Position numbers and translations under genes: made by a program. Below the pieces are notes generated by a model, which made no database searches, was not told the origin of the DNA, and worked only from the letters and a program-made list of their open reading frames with translations. A stretch of DNA of 59,857 nt, the filler included, from Sluysia triapertura (Eukaryota), in the NCBI GenBank assembly GCA_046118255.1. It is 4 parts of 4 records of this genome, joined end to end, with 100 filler letters (N's around TTAATTAATTAA, not from the genome) between each part and the next. Parts side by side here need not be neighbours in the genome. Positions count along the whole stretch, not along the records: positions 1 to 20,207 come from JBJNIA010033266.1; 3 more parts are not named here. One strand, written 5' to 3'. This document shows, one piece after another, positions 1 through 36,245 of the stretch (positions within the stretch are counted from its first letter, which is position 1; each line of letters starts with the position of its first letter).

Positions 1-31
1 CTATTATTATTATTATTAATATTATTATTAC

Positions 32-77
<46 letters not shown>
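1..77. repeat. (ATT)n microsatellite
   Basis: Near-perfect TTA/ATT trinucleotide run. Confidence 0.95.
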
Positions 78-254
78 TCTTCAAGGATGGAATTTGCAGA
101 TAACAAGAAAAAAAGTGTAGATAACTTACAAATATAAGGAATTATTTTATTCATCAAAGTATGCACTCATATTTTCGATACGTTGTTCATGCCGGTGGTA
201 TAAAACCCTGAATACCTAATAAATTGTTTCCATATTAAAATGGTGTCCAAATTG

Positions 255-640
255 CGAAAGACGTGTGGGACAAGTTTGGTGATGAATGGTCTAGCGTTGT
301 CATGCAAAATAGGCTGTTTCTTTAAAGTTTTGCATCATTTTATATGTTTCCCCTGTGAAATCACATTAAGCTTCTTTTGATAAATATTGAGGTTTGGAGT
401 GCGTTTTGGTGATGAACGTTTCCGATTGCCACATTGGATCCATTTCTCATCACAAGTGACACTTCCATTCAAACGTGGATCAGATGCGTGGCCAGACAGA
501 AACTTCAAGCAAGCTTCCAAGCACTTTTGTTTTTGCTTTTCATTCAATTCATGAGGAACATACTTATGTACCTATTCCACTTTGCTGATTTGAGATAAAT
601 GAGTTAATATTGTTTGTTTGCTGACACTAAACTTCAACGA
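255..640 (-). mobile_element. Degenerate mariner (DD34D) transposase remnant
   Basis: Minus-strand translation gives YVPHELNEKQKQKCLEAC (WVPHEL motif), VTCDEKWI (first catalytic D) and LHDNARP (second D), interrupted by stops and deletions. Confidence 0.9.
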
Positions 641-5226: not shown

Positions 5227-6344
5227 CTGCATAATAAATGAACATTATTTTATTTTAATTTATTAATTAATATAATTAATTAAGATAATATTGTTTGAAT
5301 ATTACAATATGCTAATTTTCTAAATTAAGAACAATTTTCTTAATCCTTTAAATACGCGTCACATCAGTAGCTTTCTAATGAATTTACTTGTTTTAATAGC
5401 CGAATAACGCTTATTGTCGCTGCATACATGTTGATTATTTATGTTAGCGCTTGGATATATCAGTCGTATACAGTACATGATAGGGTATTTTAGATTTGTT
5501 TGTATCACCACGTCTATTACGTACTTAGAATTATGGATAAATCATTTACTCGACTAATCGCTTCATCACTTTCATTCGGATTTCTATGTTTTTCGAAGTC
5601 AGTCGTTATCGTTATTTTTATACTATGGGTACAACATAGTATCAATGAGTTTACTAAACTATATAAAAGACGTAATTAAATTCCCAATAAGATTCGATCG
5701 ATTTAACACCAACCCACACACACAAAAAAAGTCTTTGTAGATCATGCTGCCACTTCAATCATAAGAGACAAGCAACGACCACTATCAGAAACATTGCAAT
5801 TTTTCTTGGTCGTAAACAGTATTATATTTTAAATTTCAAAGAATTCGCTTCGGCACTTTTTATTTGTTTTCAAATTGGTTTATCAGCTGAAAACCAAAAT
5901 AATCTTTCTCTAAAATATCACCTAAATCAGGAACATAAACGTTTGCCTGCTTTCTCCATTATCATTCGATATACATCAAAGGAACAATGACAATGTAATA
6001 TGTTTGAACATATAAACAATTATAGAACATAGTATTGTATTATACTATGATTATCGATTATATTGAAAATTTTTGTTGGAATTTTATGATTTTTATTTCA
6101 TTGGAATTTTATATATGTATTATTAAATGTAAGTATTTTAAATTTAATTTTGAATTTAATAAATTTAATATTTAATTATAAAATGAATTTAACTAACGAT
6201 AACCAGCTTTGTTTTCATAAATTAAAATATAATTGTGTCAAGGTTATTTTAATTTTAGTATGAAATAACAACGTTTCAGTAGATAATTTCATAATTCTTT
6301 CTACAACCTAATTGGAATTCGCCTTTTTCAAATTACGAAAATTT

Positions 6345-6940
6345 GGTTATCGTTAGTTTAATTTCATTAGGTTTCGCAACACTTTAGCCACTGAGTAAAA
6401 TTTACTTAAAATATCTCTAATTGAAATTATAGTTAAGTCAGTAAAATCTTGTTTTTTTTATTAACAAATAATGAAAATAAAATATTTATCCTTTATTGTA
6501 TTTTTCTTTAAACATGTTGTGTGTTTTATGTAATATATTTTCTTAATTTTAACATACAGTGAAATAACAAATATCTCCCACATAAAATATTTGATAACAT
6601 CTTTAATAATTGTTTTTGGGTTCGTTTTAAGAACCATAGTAAAATAACAAATTTTTAAAAAAAGGTTTCATTTAAAAAACCGAAGTAAAATCACATTTAA
6701 AATCTTTTTTCAATGTAACGGTTTCTTTTAATTTCGAAACCAGAGAAAAATCTAATCAAATTCTGTTTAAAGAGAGAATCTGTGTAAACTAATATACATT
6801 TAAAACAATTAGCCTATTTGATTTTTCCAGGTTCTATTTAATAAAGAACCTTAGCAATATACCATAATAAAGATAAATTTCACCTTAAAATCAAACCAAA
6901 AGGATTCTGGTTGTATTTACTAAAGAGCCACAGTAAAATA
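6345..6940 (+). repeat. Dispersed repeat, copy A, with stem-loop/AGTAAAAT array
   Basis: Aligns by eye to the reverse complement of about 35840-36245; six GGTT..AACC-type hairpins at 6619, 6664, 6720, 6760, 6829 and 6908, each followed after 2 nt by an AGTAAAAT-like octamer. Confidence 0.8.
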
Positions 6941-8337
6941 CATCGCACTTAATGTAATATAAATTTATTCTGTCAAAACTCTATAAACTTCATTTCTCAC
7001 AATAATAATCATTGATCGATTTTTTTAATGACTACATTTAACAAATCAGATATTTTTATTAATAACATGGTATCAAAACTTAGTATAAAACATCATAATT
7101 TTACTAAATTTTTTTCGGCATTAAGTTTCCTTTTTAATAATGCTTTTATGCAGCACACACAAAACTCATAAGGTTTGCTCCAATGAAAGATGAAGTGACA
7201 AAACAATTCTAAATAATGCATTAAATATCACACCAAATAAGGTCCTAGATTAAATTATTTATTTACGACTTAATAAAAAGTTATGATTATTATTTTTATT
7301 ATTATTGTGAAAAATGACGATGATTTTGCAAATACGTTATTGTATTGTATAATTTTAAGGTTCTATGAAATATGAAATGTTTAAGTCCGTGGATGAAACT
7401 GTTAGACATATTTAACATTTAAATTAATGGTCAAAATAAAGACGAATGTTATATCTATCTGACATTCATAAAATTTAATTCAAACACCTAATCTAATCCG
7501 TAGACAGTAAGAGTGTTCATAAAAATGGTATAAGTAGGCAGCGTTGAGTTTAAAAAATCGGTTTCCAGCACACTGCAGTTTTACAAATTCGTAAACTAAA
7601 GGTTAATGCATCGTTGAACTGGTTTAATGAATAACATTAAGTGGTAAAATGAGAAATGTATAACGATCTAGTTGATTACTGTTAAGAATTTTGTTCGATT
7701 GTGTCAGTGTGCTTTAGTAAAATTAGACGTTGTGAATTGAGCAATCACAAAAACAATTTTCGTAAATAAATTAAATGAACCAATCATTTTTTGTCACTGC
7801 AGATGCACATATTAATGTTATTTAATATGTTAATTGGTACACATTGAATAATTTATCAAGATAATTAAGTCTTAATATTGGTGAATTTCAGACAATTTTA
7901 CAATTACCATTCAAAAAGAAATCCATTTCGAAGATATTCAATTAAAAATGAAAAATATTGCTAAAAATAGGAAAAGTTTTAAAACATTTGTGAAAACAAG
8001 ACATGAAAAATAAAGTTGCCGTCACAATGATAATGATAATAATAACAATAGAGAATTGTTATTGGTTGACGAAATAGGATAATATTTAAACTCATTTCTA
8101 TGCAATGATAATTAGAGTAATTAATAACTAGGGAAAACTTATCATAACTTTAGTTTAATTGAACAGTATTTTGATTTGCTAAAAGAACTTAAAATTACGT
8201 TAAAATAAACAACTACTTAAACTCGATTTACTGAGACATGTACACGCCTAAAACCATAGTCTTAAGTAAACAGAGTTTTAGATTCGTTATGCGCCTGACG
8301 TAATAACACAAATATAAATAAATATTTGATCACTAAC

Positions 8338-8640
8338 GCAGAATCTTGAACACGGAATGCTCAGTTATAATTTCTGTAACATTTATCATTTCTTCTCCAA
8401 ATATTAAATCTATGATCATATACGAACATCGCACAGTCTCAGTAAAAGTATCAAACTCTGTTACGTATAAAGAACCGTTTTGCAATACGATACCTTTTAG
8501 ATGAGGATCAACTTCGTAAAACGTTGATCCACTGACTGCATCTTGATTAACCACTAAGTTGCACATTAATAAAAATTCACTTTGATTTGTGAAACGGTAA
8601 ATCCATTCAAACACTGGTACAGCATCGTAAAACGTGACAA
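8338..8640 (-). CDS. Open phase-1/phase-1 exon encoding an Ig-like domain
   Basis: ttcag acceptor and gttagt donor, 303 nt open; FLLMCNL...VLQNGSLYV...TVRCSY (NGSLxI-type E strand, two Cys). Confidence 0.65.
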
Positions 8641-9309
8641 CTGAACAATAAGTGATACTACTGTTAAGATATTCTGTAAGACTTCGCGAATAGTTTTATT
8701 ATTATTATTATTTTTATTATTAATTTTATAATATTTAATTCATTATTAAAATTGTTATCGTCATCCTCATTGATAAAAATATGAAATGGGTGCTTAATGC
8801 AGGTAAAAAAATTTATTATTATTATTATTATTATTAGTGAAACTATAATCATAAAAGTAACAAGAGTATGCTTTATTAATTTTAAAAACATAAAAAGACG
8901 GCACAGCATGTCTTAGTTCATATAGCACGATTGAATAAGGATAAATAGAGATTTCATTTATTACGTTAAATTTACTACCTGCATTGTCCAAGAACAAAAT
9001 TAAATGCCTTCTAACTTCAGTAAAAGCATTAAATAGCATTTAAAAAGTCACTTAAAACATTCCACCCATTATCGAATAACATTAAAAACACAAGTTCACA
9101 ATTCCTTAATGCTCATTTATTTAGATAACTTCAAAAATGTCAAGAAATATTAAAGAATATAAGGAAAGTTCGTGTTAAGTAATCTAAAGACTTTATGAAT
9201 TTATAACAATAATAATAATGAAAACATTGTTATTATTATTATTATTATCATTTTTATTTTTAATTATTTTCAACTTTTAATTTTAATTTTATCATATGAC
9301 CAGAAATTA

Positions 9310-9464
9310 CCACTATCAATGGTGACACTATTGGTTACTATGTATAAATTCCTGTCACCATTGATAGTGGCTTGTCTGTCAATCATGTCCCTCCAAACGG
9401 TATTACTGGTTGTCTAACCAGAGTGTACTTGATCATTATTTTTATCACTCTGGTTGAACAACCA
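9310..9464. ncRNA. Pair of long hairpins (candidate pre-miRNA-like or cis-structural elements)
   Basis: Perfect 18-bp inverted repeat 9310-9327/9353-9370 (25-nt loop) and 17/19 inverted repeat 9407-9425/9446-9464 (20-nt loop). Confidence 0.45.
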
Positions 9465-10039
9465 ATCAAGATGATTTCTTATTTATTGTGATGTGCGTAT
9501 TGGTGGTTGATGGTAATTTGATTTGTGCAAAGAGTATAGTCAGAAATGTTAACAAATTTAATTTACAAATTAAACGATACAAATAAAATTTTACTGGTTA
9601 TAAAATTCTACTGGTTATAACTAAAAGTTAACCTATAAGTTTCTTTTTCATAATTGAATATGAATGGTGATGAATGTAAATAAAATCCTCTTCTGCTAAA
9701 GTTGAAAAAACTGTATGATTTAAAAATTGAAAATTATGATGAGCTATTGGACGATTTTCAATGAATGTGGTTTAAAATTGATAAATTAAGTAATAGTGAT
9801 AGTCATGAACGCTAGCAACTTTTATACATTAGTAGTTCAAATAAAATCAATGATATTCTCATTTATTAGGTTTACTTACATGTCCATTATCATAGTTTCG
9901 ATGTCAATGCTTCAAAAGAATTTATTAATAAAAATCTGGAATAGGCTTTTACTTCTATAAATTACTATAAAAATATATTCAATGTTATGAAATGTGAAGT
10001 TAGTAATTTGAGAATTCTCATCACCAGTTTCACAATCAT

Positions 10040-10336
10040 ATGAGATTAAATACTGACAACTATATCAATATATTTTCTCAATATTATTCGATTTTAAAAG
10101 CGAAAAGATCAAATGAAAATTTAAAAGGCATACACTTTTATAAATTTATGATGACAATTTGTACAGAATTATTGGAAAACAATAAAGATAAATTTGAGAT
10201 GGTTCAAGGGATGTTGAGTTTCCGAGTGGAAGCAGGTGTGGAGCTCGCACCGATAATGCTTATGGCCGATATACGAGTTAAAGTGGATAATCTATCAAAC
10301 ACAAATATCATCAAATTGTTTATTCAAGATCAATGA
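10040..10336 (+). CDS. Unknown ORF, probably the frameshifted upstream part of the CCCH gene
   Basis: 98 aa open; its stop overlaps the next ATG (ATGA); degenerate coding-like sequence extends back to about 9660. Confidence 0.4.
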   Translation: MRLNTDNYINIFSQYYSILKAKRSNENLKGIHFYKFMMTICTELLENNKDKFEMVQGMLSFRVEAGVELAPIMLMADIRVKVDNLSNTNIIKLFIQDQ

Positions 10337-10917
10337 GTACAGGCCTAAATTTAATTTCAAATAAAGTTCTGCGGTTAAATATATCCCAGTTAAGTATTGA
10401 ATATAAAGAAAAATGTAAAGAAGATTCTAAAATACTTTCTGTTTATCATTGTACTGTTCCTTTTAAATGTCGTTATTTTTGCCATATATCCAAGAATGTA
10501 ATGTACCTTCCATCGGTTCCTGGCCATTCAATGTTTCATAAATATTTCAATAATGCATTAAGTTCAAGTCAACGTATTAGAACAGCACTTTGCCCATATA
10601 CTAGTGACATAAATGATAGATGCATAAAATTCGGAGTTAATTGCGTATACGCGCACGCTGTTAATCAGTTATCAAATCATAAATTCAATTATATGTCTAA
10701 CATAGATCATGTGGTTAGAATTACAAATCTACTCGAATGTATAGGAATATCAGCTTCAGAAATATTCGGCAACGTTGGATCTATGGCTAATCACACAGTA
10801 AATAAATTCTATATTTACACAAATCCTAATTTAATGAAAAGTACCACACAGAGAATTATCTACTTTAACATTCAAAAATTTAAATTTTATATGTCAAATA
10901 AAAATTTTAGTGTTTAA
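10333..10917 (+). CDS. CCCH zinc-finger protein (TTP/ZFP36-like lead-in), intronless, possibly partly decayed
   Basis: RIRTALC-x9-C-x6-C-x3-H (CPYTSDINDRCIKFGVNCVYAHAVNQL) resembles RYKTELC...CQFAHGxxEL; a second Cys/His cluster CKEDSKILSVYHCTVPFKCRYFCH lies upstream; 194 aa open. Confidence 0.65.
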   Translation: MSTGLNLISNKVLRLNISQLSIEYKEKCKEDSKILSVYHCTVPFKCRYFCHISKNVMYLPSVPGHSMFHKYFNNALSSSQRIRTALCPYTSDINDRCIKFGVNCVYAHAVNQLSNHKFNYMSNIDHVVRITNLLECIGISASEIFGNVGSMANHTVNKFYIYTNPNLMKSTTQRIIYFNIQKFKFYMSNKNFSV

Positions 10918-11199: not shown

Positions 11200-11710
11200 A
11201 ATCGAATTTATTTACAAAAAAGGAAGAAATCTTCATAAATGTTTTCTTTTGAGAACACTGCGACACACTTTCTGGCAAGTGTCCTCTGAATGCTTTTTTT
11301 TGTTTATTTTACGCTTTTAGCATAAAATGCGTTTTTTAGAAATCCACATAGTAAAAAATCAAGCAGCTTCAGATTCAGAAATCTGGCAAGCCATTCGATT
11401 GGTCCTCGGCGTCCAATCCAACGGCCAGGAAATGTTTCATCAGCCATTGTCAATCATGTTTGGTGTAGTGCACATGTGCTCCGTATTGTTGAAAATGGGG
11501 TAAATCTTTAACAATAGGAAACACTTTAGACTTCAGCATGTAACGTTCACCATTAACAGTCCCTTCAAATTTGGATACAAGATTGAACATTGTCGACTTA
11601 CTCGGTACAGATTTAAATTCACTGGATTTTAAAACTAATTTTTCTGTACTATTTTCGTAAATTCTAGCTTCCTTGGTCCTAGCTATATGATCTACCCTAA
11701 AAAGCAATTA
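11200..11710 (-). mobile_element. Deleted Tc1/mariner-superfamily transposase remnant (DUF4817-type N-terminus)
   Basis: PSKSTMFNLVSKFE, FQQYGAHVH (FQQDGAPxH) and FPGRWIGRRGPIEWLARFLNLKLLDFLLCGFLK (WPARSPDLTPLDFFLWGYLK). Confidence 0.85.
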
Positions 11711-12599
11711 GGGTCTGTATCCAGCTATTTTTTAATTCGCCATTTATTAAGACTATAATAATAATAATTATTATTATTACTATTATTATTATTTCAGTGA
11801 ACTCCTAATAATCACAAGCAAACACTGCCACAAATCAACACATCTTGCATAAGCAAGTTATTAAATAAACTACAACAGATCAAACCACTAGTCAATACAT
11901 ACAAAACATAAATACAGTCCTAATAATATCATGATTGTCCAAATCTGTTATATTATTATCGTTGTTGCAAGATTTTGACTACTGTTTTTCTTTATGATTG
12001 TATGAATGTGTCTATGTTATTGTATTTTTATCACTATTATTATTGTTATTACTTCCACTAATACTAAATATGGCTAAATACGATATTTCTGAAACAGAAA
12101 GAACTTTATTTTGTTTTAAATATTTCATTAATATCTCTTTCTAAATAACATAAAATAAGTCCTCAAATCGCTTAAAATATTTTTGAAGCATATAGAGAGA
12201 GAGAGATTTGTTTGAATTATGAATTATTAATATGAATTATTATTAATGATTGAATTGATATGAAAATAATAAATTAAATCTATTAAATTCTAATGTTATT
12301 TCAATGTGTAATATATTTGATATTTCTACATTTCTCATTTCCATTAACGTATTTTGAAGATGATTACCACATACTCGAAAATGGAGGTATCAATGTTACA
12401 TTAAATCATGTATATGTGAACACGAATGCAATTAATGGAGTAAGATGCGTTATATTTCGTTATAATGTATCTAGCTATTAAACTTATTAATATAAAGTTA
12501 TTTTTTCAATACTTTTTTTACTTAAATGTTTATATTAAACTCTGTTCATATTGAACAAGGTTGGCTGTATGTAGTAATTACAATACAAAAAAAGCTTAC

Positions 12600-12827
12600 T
12601 TTCTATATCTCGATCTATTGGAAGATACATATAAAGTATTCTACATTCTAAGTCCAATCTAAATTTTCCATACTTGTAGAGATCTTTTAGTAAACCGTTT
12701 TTGTATACAACATTTTTAGTAAGCACAATAACTCTTAACAAATTATTATAATACGCGTCAAGCAGAACTTCACAAATTAAGTGTAAATCATTCCCCAATA
12801 CTTCAAGAAAGAATTTCAGATCAGGTG
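12600..12827 (-). CDS. Open phase-1/phase-1 exon, divergent Ig-like domain
   Basis: caag acceptor and gtaagc donor, 228 nt; PDLKFFLEVLGNDLHLICE...LDLECRI. Confidence 0.5.
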
Positions 12828-14065
12828 CTTGAATTATAAAATTTAATTTAAATTCTTAATTCAGTTATAGTAAATTATAAAATTTTAGAGATTAAAATGA
12901 TTAAAATAAATAAATTTTTTATTCATTTTGTTCCAAATTTGAAATTTTTACTACTTGTTTACGAATTTAAATTTACGAATTTATATTAACTAAGTCCTTC
13001 AAAACTTGCTTTACAATATTTTGATATAATTCAATTGAAGTACCACGAGCAGTAGGCTCGCTTCTTTTGAATAAATTAATTTTATGCTGCATCTTTAAAT
13101 TTAGATACTATCTAATGATAGAGAGTAATGACTTCATGTTTTTTTAAAAGGAATTACATTAACTCAAATTTTACCTTTTTCATTTTTTTAGCGAAAAATT
13201 CAGAAATGCCATAAAATTGACAGTATTTATCGTACATGAATATTATGCATCAATAATATAAAATTGAAAACATAGATTAAATTAAATAGATAAATTATGT
13301 TGCAAGAGAATATTGATAAGCAAGATTATAATTCAAAATCATGACAGTAATTTACAAATGCTTACATTACGGAAGTCTTGAATATTTTTTTAGAAATAAT
13401 AAAGAAATTTGAAACCAAGATGAATATTTCATTGAGACAATAATAATCTATACAGAATCCACATTGATAATAAGCTAGATGATAGGTTGTATACCGTTTA
13501 TGTTTCAAAATATACAATCAGAATGTCAAATTACTGGAATATTATGAAATATTTAAGAAAAAGACAAAGTTGTTTCTGTTTCAGAAATATTATAGTGATA
13601 TTATAGTAATATTATAGTACTTACTTTGCAGTAGATATGAGCGCAATATAANNNNNNNNNNNNNNNNNNNNNNNNNNNNNNNNNNNNNNNNNNNNNNNNN
13701 NNNNNNNNNNNNNNNNNNNNNNNNNNNNNNNNNNNNNNNNNNNNNNNNNNNNNNNNNNNNNNNNNNNNNNNNNNNNNNNNNTTAAACATAATACTCATTT
13801 TTACTATTAACATTTTGTAAATAAATAATGTTCATTATAAACTCATTTATTTAATGATATAATGAAATAAATGTTGAAATCATTATTATTCATCTTAAAA
13901 TATTAATGCTTAAAAAATTACAAAGATTATAATGCCTTAGTATCAATTTAAAATGAGATTACATATAATTAATATAAATTTAAAATTTAATAACTTTTTC
14001 ACACAAAATTATACACTAAAATCGATAAATTGATTCATTGTAAATTGAAGTAAACGTCGGAAATA

Positions 14066-14720
14066 TTAGATTGGTGCATAAATTCGTGCGGTTTTATTTG
14101 TAGCAAAGAAAGCACACCAACTTCTTGTTTTAACTGATTTCAGTTATATTCATTCAGTTGAATTATATCTATTTAAATCATTTTAGACTAACTTTCACTT
14201 TCATTACCCTCATTTAAATGGAGTGTCAGGTAGATAAAAATGAACATTTTTGGTATCTACTCCTTTTCTATTTTAATCAACATTTAAACGCTGCACAAGC
14301 CAATAATTTTACAGCATGACAATGCTCGGTCTCATGTTGCCACAATGACAAAGTTGGCTTTTGAAGAGCGTGGCTGAGAATTCCTCCCAATACCCCGTAT
14401 TCGCTCGACTTGGCATAGCCCCAACAGATTTTCATCTTCTCCGCTCCATGTCGAACCATTTTTGTGGTCTCACATTTGAAAATGAAGAAACAATAACAAC
14501 GTGGATTGAAGAACTATTCGACCAAAAATCACCAAGTTTCTTCAAACGTAGGATTGACAAACAGCCAGAACGGTGGAAGGAAGTGATCGATTGTGGCGGA
14601 TAATATCTCACCGATTGAGACTGAGATATTTGTATTTTCTAATGATTTAATAAATTCATTTTTGCATGGTTTTCATTCTTGATCAATATGTATTGTTTTC
14701 ATAATTGTAAAAAACCACTA
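14066..14720 (+). mobile_element. Internally deleted mariner element
   Basis: TA followed by TIR TTAGATTGGTGCATAAATTCGTGCGGTTTT; MECQVDKNEHFWYLLLFYFNQ, LQHDNARSH, IAPTDFHLLRSMSNH, RWKEVIDCGG. Confidence 0.92.

Positions 14721-15307: not shown

Positions 15308-15308
<1 letters not shown>

Positions 15309-15378
<70 letters not shown>
15309..15378. repeat. (AAT)n directly abutting (ATT)n: self-complementary microsatellite
   Basis: Read directly from the sequence. Confidence 0.9.
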
Positions 15379-15614: not shown

Positions 15615-16060
15615 CAGTGGTGGCCAAATTATTAGATTAAAACAAGAAAAATATGAAAAGTGGTCGTTTGTAAAGAAAACATCAGCGAGAAATGATAGAT
15701 ATTTGGTGAAACTTTCCACCAGCATGACTTTGCTGAAACAGTAAGAGACTAGCGGAATTCACGTTAGTCCAGAACAGTCAGGACAATGATTTGCCAGATA
15801 GACGACCCAGAAAAAAGCTTAGGTTGGCATGGTTTAAGGAAGACCAACATTTAACTGAGGATGACTGGAGTCAAGTGTGTTTTAGTGACGAGTCGTCCTT
15901 TCAAGTACTGAATGGCAAGACCACTTTTACAAAGAGACTTAATGAGGAGTTTGTTCATAGAAACTGTGAAACATCCAACTTTTGATTAATAGCTTCCTAG
16001 TATCCTTGAAAAATGTTAAATTTTATCAAAAAAATGGTTGCATTTATCTAATAATTTGTC
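15615..16060 (+). mobile_element. Deleted Tc1-like element
   Basis: TA followed by CAGTGGTGGCCAAATTATTAGA TIR; RKTSARNDRYLVK and RLAWFKEDQHLTEDDWSQVCFSDES (first D); partial right TIR TCTAATAATTTGTC near 16046. Confidence 0.88.
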
Positions 16061-17194: not shown

Positions 17195-20136
17195 CAAGTA
17201 ATATAATTTATTAACACATTTAAAGGCTATTACAGCTTTAATTATTTCTTCCACCACCATTACTCTTTATTTTAAATATCAATACTTGTGAAATTGTTAT
17301 TAGATTTTGTTTAATAAAGTTTTTGAATTTGTAGTCTTAGCTTTGTTAGGTACAAATCACAGGAACGCTCACTATAATACTCTTGCTTTAACCAGACCCT
17401 GCTCAAAAACATTTTTCCGTAGATAAAACCACAGCATTTTTGAGCTCAGTAATTATAATTGATTTTTAAGAGTACTTTTTATATAACAATATATTTATAG
17501 AGAATACATTTACTTACCAATACTAAAAATATACTAACATCTGGCTTTATAACATCGTTTTTCTTCATTTCTTCCGTCAGTACAAGATACACAAAATGCC
17601 GGATCACATATTGGCCCTACTGTCACATCATTGTCTAAAGACTTGTTATGTTTCTTTGGTAGATCATTAAAGTAAGGATTTTTACTACCACCACTACGAA
17701 GAATACAAAGTAATCTTATAGATATATTGCATAAATAATGAGCTGTATCCGGGAGAATGATTGAATGGGAAGGTGAATCTAAATATGAGTACAACCTATG
17801 TCAAAAGTGCACTTTCTGAAAACATTTACAATAGCATATTGTTCATACTCTTCGATTTACATATTTATAATTTTACTGTGAATCATATGAAATTTCTTAG
17901 ATATATTTAATGAAAAAATTTACTTTTATGTTCAATCGTAAACATAAACCAGGGCAACAATTAGAATAAGAGAACAAACAGTAGAATAAATGTAAATCAA
18001 TTAGATGCAACTGAGCAAACTGAAGGACTGTAGGAATGAATTTATATTAAAAATTTTAACAAAGCCATTTTTATGGTGATTATTTCTGAGAATATTATTA
18101 ATTCCCATATGGAATTAAATAATAATTTCCATTAATAGCTATATTATTGTTAATATCATTATTGTTAATAAAGTTTCTTAAGCTTTCAGTTTTAAAATGG
18201 ACCACACATAATTGAATTTTGATTATAATTCTTATTATGAGTATCATCTCCCAAATTTGGTCATATATTCGGATCTTGATTCGAAATATTGATGAATAAA
18301 CTTTAATGATGAATAAACTGTTTAACTTCACTCATTTTAGGATACACAGTAATCAATTAAGTAACATTTGTTTAATTTCTAGTTACCATAAATATTTTTG
18401 TAGAAATTTCATCAGCTGTAGCAGTAACATATTCCCTTTGACATCATCTGAACCATGTGGTTTTTTTTGTTATATCGTTTTTAATTTTCGTTAATCGAAC
18501 TTAAACAAATATGAAGCCATTTAATAAAATCAGAAGAAATAAACAACAATCTCAACATAAAGTTAATGAAAATTTAAAAATATACTTTATATTATATAAA
18601 TGAAATATTGAATAGAAAAATAAAGCAAACCATTTAAAATAAATTAAATGGAAAATAAAATTAATACTAACATAAATAAAAACTTTCTATCATTATAAAT
18701 AATATGGATATCATAAATCAATATTAAAATTATATTCTTTAATTTTTGTAAAATTAATTTTGCATATTTTTGAGATTTTTGGTGATTGAAATAAGTTTAT
18801 ACTTGGGATTATTATGTATGTATAATAATATCAAAATGAATATTTATAAAGAGTTTACTATGCTAAATTTAATAATATAATTTTGACAATATTAAAATAA
18901 ATCTGGATAATTTAGTTTATATAATGGCAATTTTTAAAAAATATCTCTTAAATCACTTCAGAATATAATGAATTTCATCGGCTTTCAAAATCAATTATTT
19001 GTTCATTTTTATGTTTATTGTTGATTAGACTATACCGTTAGATTTTACAAATTAATTTTATTCTAAATTACATCTCGAAAAATATGAAGAAATATATCTT
19101 AATCAAAATATGAAATCCAAAAAGTAATTCATCAAAATATTAACAAAAAATGAAAATTTTAAATTAATAAGATAAAAAACAAACTTACGGTGCCCTCTGA
19201 GTGGTTTTTCTAACACTTAACCAACCGCAAAATATTTTTGAGTAGGGTCCAGTTACAGTAAACACGTCTTATGTCGTGAAGAGGGTGTTTCTTAATTAGA
19301 GTCTTATTAAATGCTCACTTATAAAAATTGTTCTGCTTACATAATCTTTAATAAAAAATTAATTACCAATAAATTCACAAAGAATTATATTTAAAAAAGA
19401 ATTCAAATAATAAACTATACAATTAAATAACACTAAGAAAGATAGATTACTGGAACAAAAATCAAAATTGAATATTGCTAGTGTTTTTCTTTTACTTAGC
19501 AAATTGTAATTACCAATGAAGGTTCGCCTACGATACATCTAAGAAGACGTACCCGCATTTATAAACTCGAGGTTATATTTGGGAAAAGTTATTATTGTAA
19601 TACTTGCATCTTGGCCTTATGTTATACGACGGTATTTCTTATTTAAGAGATTTATCAATGCAGTAAATTCTCTGAGGGTTTCTTCGTTAATTAGTCTACA
19701 TAAGATGGTTTATATTCTATCTACCTAAACACCAATAAAAATTATACTTGTAAATAAGTATGTTGTAGGATCAATGCTATCTTTATTTTAAGGAATTTGA
19801 TTCTTTTTCAAGATGAGTCATTTCTCTCTAGATTTTATTTTATTTAGGCATCAATGAACTTTAAATAAATGTGAACTATCAGTAAATATGTTTTTTTTCT
19901 ATAAATTCTATTCATCCTTAATTAATTGTTAATTTTAGTAAACTTCTTTTATTTAATTGTCTGAATTTAATTAATATAGGTAAATTGAATATCTCTGTAA
20001 TTCCTTCGTATCCTCCGTAGACAATGTTTTATAAATAATCTCATTAATTAAATTAAATTAATTTATTACATCGTTTTACTGTTGTTTTATTTGAATTAGA
20101 ACGCTAAATGTTAGATTTCTTGACATTCTTATAATT

Positions 20137-20207
<71 letters not shown>

Positions 20208-23553: not shown

Positions 23554-23825
23554 CGCAACCCGTATTAAGGTGTTGCTTTATCAAACAAATTTTAAATTAA
23601 TAAATAAGAAAGACACTTAAAATCCTTAATGTATATTAACACAACTAAAAGTCGAACGCTTACAAAAGTGACTTATAATAAAAATAAGATTTTAAATCAA
23701 CTACTCAATTGGCATTGTAGCTATCAAATATTTTAATAAGATTTTTCGCAACCCGTATTAAGGTGTTGCATTAAAAATAGGAATATTTTTAATGTATTTT
23801 GGGTTTCCTCTCTTAGAGTGAAACC
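23554..23825 (+). repeat. Two identical 23-nt hairpin units plus a GGTTTC/GAAACC hairpin
   Basis: CGCAACCCGTATTAAGGTGTTGC at 23554 and 23747; GGTTTC..GAAACC at 23802-23825. Confidence 0.85.
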
Positions 23826-35839: not shown

Positions 35840-36245
35840 GGATTTTTCTCTGGTTTGAATATACAAACCTTTCAATTATTTATTGATTTTACTTAGGTTC
35901 AGTATAAATGAACCTTTGACGAAGTTTATGGAATTTTACTTAGGTTCTCTCAGGAACCTGATCAATTATTTTTAAAAAATGAATACACAAAATTGAAAAT
36001 TTTATTAGTACAATTTAATTCAGATAAAAATTATATTACAATGGGACAATAATCTATACAATAAAAATAATATATAATTTAGAAAAGATTATTAATTTAA
36101 TAATCTTAATAGAAATTTTAATTAGGATTTTCCTCAGCTATCTATAAATGATAGCTTTAATGATTAACAATTAGAATTTGAGTTAATTTTACAAAGGCAA
36201 CTTCTAAATGTTGCAAAAAACTTATAAGTAAAAACTAACGGTAAC
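35840..36245 (-). repeat. Dispersed repeat, copy B, with stem-loop/AGTAAAAT array
   Basis: Minus strand: GCAAC/GTTGC, AGCTATC/GATAGCT, GGTTC/GAACC-ta-AGTAAAAT twice, GGTTTG/CAAACC-ag-AGAAAAATC; collinear with 6345-6752. Confidence 0.8.

What the first reader, a model, noticed from the sequence alone, without database searches (positions are those of the whole stretch)
6345..6940. Array of covarying stem-loops, each followed at fixed distance by AGTAAAAT, conserved at several loci
Seen: six hairpins of pattern GGTTY-(AT-rich loop)-RRACC-NN-AGTAAAAT separated by unrelated spacers. The collinear copy at 35840-36245 (minus) keeps the stems and tail motif while loops and spacers have diverged, and shows compensatory changes (GGTTT/AAACC versus GGTTC/GAACC; GGTTTC/GAAACC versus GGTTTG/CAAACC). 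Related units occur at 23802 and 27895, and the GCAAC/GTTGC unit at 36197 recurs at 23554 and 23747. Inference: structure under selection in a mobile or viral element, such as protein-binding RNA arrays (packaging, IRES-like or processing signals) or DNA origin/enhancer arrays analogous to baculovirus hr regions. I do not recognise this as a described element.
Basis: partly seen in the sequence, partly recalled or inferred. Interest (0 to 1): 0.8.

Follow-up and report, generated by a model that had tools for sequence, protein, structure and literature searches.

The report
Short palindrome array, probably transposon-derived
A real cluster of about five small palindromic units, each followed by an AGTAAAAT-like tail, lies in AT-rich, transposon-littered animal DNA; it looks most like the arrays of protein-binding repeats carried near the ends of mobile elements, so it is probably ordinary rather than a new RNA or viral element.

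Summary
The cluster is real and not chance, but smaller than described. Four perfect hairpin-capable units lie at 6619, 6664, 6720 and 6829, and one imperfect unit at 6909. The "unit" at 6370 has the tail but no stem. Five exact AGTAAAAT lie on one strand within 546 bp; the whole window holds 14 against 4.15 expected. Whole units, loops included, are about 72% alike. The spacers (16-80 nt) do not align.

No Rfam family matches, and there is no viral context: the window is low-coding eukaryotic DNA with mariner/Tc1 remnants. A second, weaker cluster of the same core plus tail lies on the opposite strand at 9400-9633.

The only arrays of this module found elsewhere are in contigs of a probable plant genome. 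There they are the subterminal repeats of a CACTA transposon and the arrays between pol and the 3' LTR of LTR retroelements.

Best reading (about 45%): a decayed mobile-element array of composite DNA-binding sites. No terminal inverted repeats, target duplication or element protein were found, so membership in a family is unproven.

Evidence for an RNA structure is thin: stems of 5-7 bp, one or two covarying positions. The claims about other loci could not be checked.

The parts
6619..6645 (+). Unit U1: 5-bp palindrome GGTTC/GAACC, 7-nt loop, 2-nt spacer, exact tail AGTAAAAT
   Evidence: folds as predicted
6664..6691 (+). Unit U2: GGTTT/AAACC, 8-nt loop, 2-nt spacer, exact tail
6720..6751 (+). 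Unit U3: 6-bp palindrome GGTTTC/GAAACC, 10-nt loop, 2-nt spacer, tail with one mismatch (AGAAAAAT)
6760..6789 (+). Possible decayed unit: ATTCT/AGAAT palindrome, 2-nt spacer, tail-like GTGTAAAC (weak)
   Evidence: read; direct-repeat family D3
6829..6860 (+). Unit U4: 6-7-bp palindrome (A)GGTTCT/AGAACC(T), 9-nt loop, tail with two mismatches (AGCAATAT)
   Evidence: (z -3.6)
6909..6939 (+). Unit U5: imperfect palindrome GGTTGT/AGAGCC (one T.G, one mismatch), exact tail; 79% identical to U4 over 33 nt
   Evidence: (D2); predicted fold does not use this stem
6370..6401 (+).
6440..6447 (+). Exact tail AGTAAAAT without a GGTT-type palindrome; a related AGTGAAAT lies at 6558-6565
6186..6363 (.). 178-bp segment bounded by 25-nt inverted arms (88% complementary); the right arm holds the GGTT at 6345
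   Evidence: (I2)
9400..9633 (-). Second, weaker cluster in the opposite orientation: GGTTA/TAACC + AGTAGAAT (9633-9605), AACC + AGTAAAAT (9599-9588), GGTTG/CAACC + ag + AGTGATAA (9463-9442), GGTT/AACC + AGTAATAC (9419-9400)
   Evidence: not recovered by an HMM of the left units

Best explanation
The array is a decayed non-coding part of a mobile element. Most likely it is the subterminal-repeat region of a non-autonomous cut-and-paste DNA transposon. Each unit of about 30 bp would be a composite DNA-binding site made of an inverted pair of the core GGTT/AACC plus an AGTAAAAT-like tail at a fixed 2-nt distance. An element-encoded DNA-binding protein would occupy many such sites, as TNPA does in CACTA elements and the BED domain does in hAT elements.

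On this reading the "hairpins" are palindromic double-stranded sites, not folded RNA. Copies that keep the sites stay recognisable while spacers drift, which gives conserved units between unrelated spacers.

Shown: the cluster, the unit anatomy, the same-strand orientation, the second cluster on the opposite strand, and the existence of the same module in transposon ends elsewhere. Inferred: that a protein binds the units, that the two clusters are the two ends of one element of about 3.4 kb, and that the element is multi-copy.
For: Unit cluster far above chance.

The 4-mers GGTT and AACC occur 15 times in 6190-6945 and 11 times in 9301-9900. The simulated maximum per 600 bp has mean 8 and largest 12 in 300 runs.

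AACC, then 0-2 nt, then AGTR occurs 9 times against 2.0 expected. Two are on + in the left array and four on - at 9404-9616. This is the mirror arrangement expected for two element ends.

Whole units, loops included, are conserved at 72%, while spacers of 16-80 nt are not. That fits discrete binding sites.

The neighbourhood is full of transposon remnants.

A two-unit pattern scan of metagenome contigs gave about 40 of 120 hits from one sample series, probably one plant genome. There the module forms arrays that start about 170-200 bp inside a terminal CACTACAAGAAAA and read inward. Examples are L120 (terminus 979, units 1194-1317) and L075 (termini 522 and 2355, unit arrays at both ends). That 13-mer is the reported En/Spm terminal inverted repeat (PMC7210773).

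[quoted passage not shown] Hermes BED domains bind short subterminal repeats that form a quasi-palindrome (PMC10368747).

The stricter pattern occurs only 4 times in 596 Gb of prokaryote genomes, so the plant arrays are not background.
Against: No terminal inverted repeat and no target-site duplication were found around either cluster.

No transposase or other element protein lies between or beside the clusters. The only sizeable ORF inside, at 8336-8695 on the minus strand, has just four weak, heterogeneous hits among 1.84 billion representatives.

The right cluster is supported only at the level of the motif; an HMM of the left units does not find it.

The window shares no other sequence with the plant contigs. 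An HMM of plant units that my pattern did not select has its best window hit on U1, but only at E 0.27. The plant arrays are therefore an analogy, not shown relatives.

The fifth stem pair takes four different Watson-Crick types. A plain half-site model does not predict this.

Copy number in the source genome could not be tested.
Confidence: 0.45

Rival explanations
1. RNA-level module. The + strand is transcribed, as part of a mobile-element transcript or a host non-coding RNA. Each small hairpin plus AGUAAAAU is a binding or processing site for an RNA-binding protein, or a weak 5' splice-site-like signal.
For: All five left units lie on one strand. Stem pairs 5 and 6 change on both sides: CG, TA, AT and GC at pair 5; CG and TA at pair 6. 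The two departures in U5 and at 6370 are A-to-G changes that give T.G, which is tolerated as G.U in + strand RNA only. In the plant LTR retroelements the related arrays lie on the sense strand between pol and the 3' LTR.
Against: The stems are 5-7 bp and marginally stable. The whole array folds no better than shuffles on + (z -1.5) and better on - (z -3.4). No Rfam family matches. The units are related duplicates, so the independent compensatory events number three or four at most. A cluster on the opposite strand also exists. There are no expression data.
Confidence: 0.2
2. Internal array of a retroelement. The array would be a remnant of the variable tandem-repeat region that some LTR retroelements carry between pol and the 3' LTR, now orphaned by decay.
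For: In L142 and L150 arrays carrying hairpin, 2 nt and AGTRAAAT sit just downstream of the integrase-coding part. L142 has long terminal repeats at 6053-6352 and 14120-14419 and its array at 12264-13088. Such 3' UTR arrays are described for Tat/Ogre elements (PMC7004042).
Against: The window has no long direct repeats and no gag/pol similarity. The spacing is irregular at 37-118 nt, and Tandem Repeats Finder reports no array there. The comparators are from a probable plant.
Confidence: 0.12
3. Host cis-regulatory or chromatin element: a cluster of transcription-factor, insulator or origin sites. This is the "hr-like" reading, without a virus.
For: Clustered, oriented, conserved 30-bp units between free spacers are what homotypic binding-site clusters look like.
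Against: No recognisable gene lies nearby. No conservation data are available.
Confidence: 0.1
4. Neutral relic. An old local tandem duplication of a unit that happened to contain a palindrome, with no function.
For: U1/U2 and U4/U5 are plainly duplicates, 78-79% identical over 32-33 nt.
Against: Neutral decay would erode units and spacers alike. Here the units stay 72% identical while spacers differ in length and sequence. The 2-nt distance between stem and tail is kept in all five units.
Confidence: 0.1
5. Cluster of small RNA genes: C/D snoRNAs in a host gene, spliced-leader RNA genes, or piRNA-type units.
For: Weak Rfam match to snoMe28S-Cm3227 at 6859-6916, with a good match to the guide-like 3' half. 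The tail contains GT followed by A-rich sequence, as a 5' splice site would.
Against: The score is 26.6 against a gathering score of 43, with E 0.29, and neither the C nor the D box is intact. Nothing else reaches threshold. Units 46 nt apart leave no room for complete genes. No tRNA genes are present.
Confidence: 0.03

Closest known systems
Subterminal repeats of CACTA (En/Spm) transposons
   Same: Several hundred bp of closely spaced short repeats in direct and inverted orientation, reading inward from each end and bound by an element-encoded protein (PMC8978399, PMC2613891). In the probable plant contigs the repeats have the same build as here: GGTTY, a loop, RAACC, 2 nt, then an AGTAAAAT-like tail followed by A/C-rich bases.
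   Different: The window has no CACTA-type or other terminal inverted repeat, no 3-bp duplication and no transposase. The plant arrays are regular tandem repeats of 28 or 61 nt, whereas the window's spacing is irregular. The host is of animal type.
hAT subterminal repeats (Hermes, an insect element)
   Same: Very short motifs repeated in both orientations near both ends, some forming quasi-palindromes, and read by a zinc-finger BED domain. More sequence than the terminal repeat itself is needed (PMC10368747).
   Different: The motif differs. Neither the 8-bp duplication nor the terminal repeat was found here.
Tandem arrays in the 3' untranslated region of Tat/Ogre-type LTR retroelements
   Same: Short arrays of variable monomers downstream of pol, carried around the genome by the element (PMC7004042). 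The comparators L142, L150 and L184 carry the hairpin-plus-tail module there.
   Different: No LTR or pol remnant in the window; the array is not a regular tandem repeat.
   Same: Repeated imperfect palindromes at several places of one genome (from general knowledge; not tested with sequences).
   Different: The window is not a viral genome. The palindromes here have 5-7-bp arms. No viral comparator was fetched, as the brief forbids it.

Membership tests
DNA-transposon subterminal repeat array (CACTA / hAT type) | Many copies of a short motif in direct and inverted orientation within a few hundred bp | tested here: met
DNA-transposon subterminal repeat array (CACTA / hAT type) | Arrays at both ends in mirror orientation | tested here: inconclusive
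   A second cluster lies on the minus strand at 9400-9633, but it is similar only at the level of the motif
DNA-transposon subterminal repeat array (CACTA / hAT type) | Terminal inverted repeats at the tips | tested here: not met
   The best local alignment of the two flanks equals the shuffled mean; there is no convincing 14-mer pair; no matching CACTA-type tips
DNA-transposon subterminal repeat array (CACTA / hAT type) | Target-site duplication | tested here: not met
DNA-transposon subterminal repeat array (CACTA / hAT type) | Transposase gene or remnant (autonomous copies) | tested here: not met
   a non-autonomous copy would lack it
DNA-transposon subterminal repeat array (CACTA / hAT type) | Dispersed copies in the genome | not testable with these tools
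LTR-retroelement 3' UTR tandem array | Lies between pol and a 3' LTR | tested here: not met
LTR-retroelement 3' UTR tandem array | Head-to-tail monomers of constant length | tested here: not met
   tail-to-tail distances are 37-118 nt
Rfam structured RNA families | Covariance-model score at or above the gathering score | tested here: not met
   0 matches in the window
C/D box snoRNA (snoMe28S-Cm3227) | Gathering score reached; intact C and D boxes | tested here: not met
   26.6 bits against 43; boxes degenerate
Baculovirus-type hr region | Sits in a densely coding large DNA virus genome | tested here: not met
   12 ORFs of 80 aa or more in 20 kb, with mariner/Tc1 remnants
Baculovirus-type hr region | Sequence likeness to known hr palindromes | not tested
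Spliced-leader RNA gene cluster | Complete gene of about 100 nt with donor site and Sm site per unit | tested here: not met
   Units lie 46-79 nt apart; no Rfam match

The most novel reading that the evidence does not exclude
The hairpin-plus-AGTAAAAT module could be one conserved cis-element. It would be read as DNA or as RNA by a widely conserved host or element factor, and shared by mobile elements of different classes and kingdoms. The candidates are the CACTA ends and LTR-retroelement arrays of a plant and this array in an animal-type genome. The compensatory changes at stem pair 5 would then reflect a real structural requirement.
Probability: 0.06. Interest if true: 0.7.

Novelty: new member of a known kind. 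Interest (0 to 1): 0.3.

Why it matters
If the reading is right, the finding is a routine repeat annotation: an unclassified, probably dead mobile-element fragment. Its units give a convenient signature for finding the whole family and its still-unknown autonomous partner in the source genome.

It also shows that "covarying stem-loops" in AT-rich DNA can simply be palindromic binding sites.

The one point worth a second look is that the same small module appears in two transposon classes of a probable plant and in this animal-type window.

Tried and rejected
- **Rfam:** nothing at gathering thresholds over the window. At relaxed thresholds over 5800-7600 only a sub-threshold snoRNA match appeared. 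No tRNA genes.
- **Viral origin:** the pattern scan of viral contigs gave 68 single matches with no arrays. Those loci were not inspected further.
- **CRISPR:** the tandem hits in L111 and L138 turned out to be a bacterial Cas12a CRISPR array whose repeat happens to contain the tail. This is a chance match.
- **Identifying the source genome:** the exact-ORF look-up failed. The word search with the 194-aa ORF found nothing. A mariner fragment found one 77%-identical metagenome ORF on a 639-bp contig. The organism stays unknown beyond an AT-rich eukaryote with animal-type mariner remnants (the type is judged from memory).
- **Host gene next to the array:** ORF 8336-8695 on the minus strand has a weak PTB-domain hit and looks exon-like. 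The exhaustive search gave only four weak, unrelated hits, and the best one's contig is unrelated.
- **Termini:** searches for terminal repeats, target duplications, LTRs and gag/pol were all negative.
- **Covariance model of the units:** MAFFT put the gaps at the 5' ends instead of in the loops, so no model was built. A hand-gapped HMM built in a script found only its own five units.
- **Literature search by motif string:** it returned only primers.
- **Spliced-leader, piRNA-promoter, Helitron-end, HUH-nuclease-site and core-promoter readings:** considered from memory and dropped. They do not fit the spacing, the lack of the required partner signals, or the opposite-strand cluster.

The CACTA terminal 12-mer used in scripts was read from L120 and is confirmed by PMC7210773.
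- One search printed a very long, useless table.
- For the tblastn I wrote the separate ORF translations of L142 and L150, as they stand and unjoined, to a scratch file.
- Tandem Repeats Finder printed consensus units for retroelement arrays. I use actual copies, not those lines.

Full report
**What the window is.** The 20.2-kb piece is 26% G+C and has only 12 ORFs of 80 aa or more. It has no tRNA genes and no Rfam match at gathering thresholds. Stop-to-stop frames show fragments of mariner-like transposases at 170-571 (minus strand), 11453-11707 (minus) and 14349-14600 (plus), and a Tc1-like fragment at 15737-15982 (plus). These identifications are from memory of such proteins; Pfam did not score the short pieces. 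An N run at 13652-13781 was left alone. This is low-coding eukaryotic DNA, probably animal, and not a virus genome.

**Checking the observation.** AGTAAAAT occurs 14 times against 4.15 expected. Five of them lie on the + strand between 6394 and 6939. A search for GGTT-initiated perfect hairpins finds six on the + strand in the whole window, four of them at 6619-6850. A looser descriptor (any stem of 5 bp or more, 0-3 nt, tail with up to 2 mismatches) has a background of about 10 per window on both strands. It again gives four consecutive + strand hits within 215 bp.

The units are U1 6619-6645, U2 6664-6691, U3 6720-6751, U4 6829-6860 and the imperfect U5 6909-6939. All have exactly 2 nt between stem and tail. 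The segment at 6370-6401 has the tail but no stem. The GGTT at 6345 belongs to a 25-nt inverted repeat with 6186-6210.

U1/U2 and U4/U5 are 78-79% identical over 32-33 nt, and whole units are 72% identical by column. The intervening 16-80 nt do not align. So the cluster is real and non-random, but it is five units rather than six, and the loops are conserved as well as the stems.

**Is it an RNA structure?** Stem pairs 1-4 (GGTT/AACC) never vary and so say nothing. Pair 5 is CG, TA, TA, CG in U1-U4, and AT and GC in two units of the second cluster. Pair 6 is CG in U3 and TA in U4. This is compensatory variation, but it comes from few, related units, and units were partly found by requiring 5 bp.

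The hairpins are marginal, at -2 to -4.7 kcal/mol as DNA, and only U4 beats its shuffles. The array as RNA folds at z -1.5 on + and z -3.4 on -. A relaxed Rfam scan gives only a sub-threshold C/D snoRNA match at 6859-6916 whose boxes are not intact. The evidence for a selected RNA fold is therefore thin.

**A second cluster.** GGTT/AACC 4-mers are concentrated in two places: 15 in 6190-6945 and 11 in 9301-9900. The simulated maximum per 600 bp has mean 8 and largest 12. AACC, then 0-2 nt, then AGTR occurs 9 times against 2.0 expected, with two on + in the left array and four on - at 9404-9616. Read on the minus strand, 9633-9400 holds four units of palindrome plus tail with 0-2 nt spacers.

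The two clusters thus face each other about 2.5 kb apart, as the two ends of a cut-and-paste element would. This support is only at the level of the motif: an HMM of the five left units recovers only those units. I found no terminal inverted repeats, target duplications, LTRs, gag/pol similarity or transposase-like ORFs. The one exon-like ORF inside, 8336-8695 on the minus strand, has no convincing relatives.

**Relatives elsewhere.** The single-unit pattern gave 68 single matches in viral contigs. About 40 of them come from one JGI sample series, Ga0123340-42. The rest are single chance matches, apart from a Cas12a CRISPR array. A stricter pattern occurs only four times in 596 Gb of prokaryote genomes.

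The Ga012334x contigs are eukaryotic and probably from a plant. They carry single-ORF histone-fold (NF-Y type) and GT92 genes, and many Ty1/copia-type and Ty3/gypsy-type domains. The plant assignment is an inference. They share no other sequence with the window. They contain three array families built on the same module.

- **Family B** starts about 170-200 bp inside a terminal CACTACAAGAAAA and reads inward. L075 holds a complete 1.85-kb element with termini at 522 and 2355. Its left end carries a 28-nt tandem unit, and its right end a 61-nt unit. That terminus is the published En/Spm terminal inverted repeat (PMC7210773), so these arrays are CACTA subterminal repeats.
- **Families A and C** have units of 49/61 nt and 148 nt. 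They lie just downstream of the integrase-coding part of LTR retroelements, on the sense strand. L142 has LTRs at 6053-6352 and 14120-14419. This is the position of the variable 3' UTR arrays described for Tat/Ogre elements (PMC7004042). In both copies RT, RNase H and integrase hits fall in separate ORFs, so the copies are probably defective. I did not count the breaks.

**How far the comparison carries.** In the plant arrays the commonest tails are AGCAAAAT, AACAAAAT or AGTGAAAT rather than AGTAAAAT. My pattern, applied to a very large collection with high-copy arrays, picked the variants that match. An HMM of the plant 28-nt units, which the pattern did not select, puts its best window hit on U1, but at E 0.27. 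I therefore treat the plant arrays as a demonstrated example of what such arrays are, not as shown relatives.

**Conclusion.** The most economical reading is a mobile-element-borne array of composite binding sites, most like transposon subterminal repeats. These are known to consist of short direct and inverted repeats bound by TNPA-type or BED-domain proteins (PMC2613891, PMC8978399, PMC10368747). I give it about 45%. An RNA-level module gets about 20%. A retroelement internal array, a host regulatory cluster and a neutral relic get about 10% each. Small-RNA genes get a few per cent.

The finding is real but probably ordinary. What remains unexplained is the four-way compensatory variation at stem pair 5, and the recurrence of the module in two transposon classes of a probable plant and in this window.

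The source genome is not in any collection I could search, so copy number, boundaries and covariation across copies are untested.

Noticed in passing
window 6859-6916 (+): Sub-threshold Rfam match to the C/D snoRNA family snoMe28S-Cm3227 (26.6 bits against 43, E 0.29). The guide-like 3' half matches almost base for base, but the C and D boxes are not intact. It may be a decayed snoRNA copy or chance.
   Followed up: partly
window 6186-6363: A 178-bp segment bounded by 25-nt inverted arms that are 88% complementary. No further copy exists in the window.
   Followed up: partly
window 170-571 (-), 11453-11707 (-), 14349-14600 (+), 15737-15982 (+): Fragments of mariner-like and Tc1-like transposase genes. 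Only pieces remain, split over frames. The breaks were not counted.
   Followed up: no
window 10007-10914 (+): Two adjoining ORFs (109 and 208 codons, stop to stop) in different frames. The second has a sub-threshold UNK-like CCCH zinc finger (E 2.6e-5). The word search found no relatives.
   Followed up: partly
window 2-77 and 20131-20207: About 25 copies each of (TAT)n and (ATA)n at the two ends of the piece, mirror images of each other. A perfect (ATA)n(ATT)n junction lies at 15308-15378.
   Followed up: no
window 8336-8695 (-): Exon-like ORF with AG and GT borders at about 8640 and 8497 and a weak PTB/PID_2 hit (E 4.6e-4). It has only four weak, heterogeneous hits in 1.84 billion representative proteins.
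   Followed up: yes
L138 2287-2521 and L111 (JAEEGG / JAEEGI contigs): A bacterial Cas12a gene with its CRISPR array. The repeat happens to contain AAACC-AT-AGTAAAAT, so it matched my pattern by chance.
   Followed up: yes
L075 522-2366; L120 979 onward; L142 1-1033: A CACTA-type non-autonomous element of a probable plant genome. Both of its subterminal regions are tandem arrays (28-nt and 61-nt units) built from GGTTT/AAACC palindromes plus a GTAAAAT-like tail.
   Followed up: partly
L142 12264-13088; L150 1312-1652; L184 174-937: LTR retroelements of the same genome carry arrays with the same hairpin-plus-tail module between pol and the 3' LTR, on the sense strand. The monomer length differs between elements (61 against 148 nt). 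Why two element classes share the module is unexplained.
   Followed up: partly
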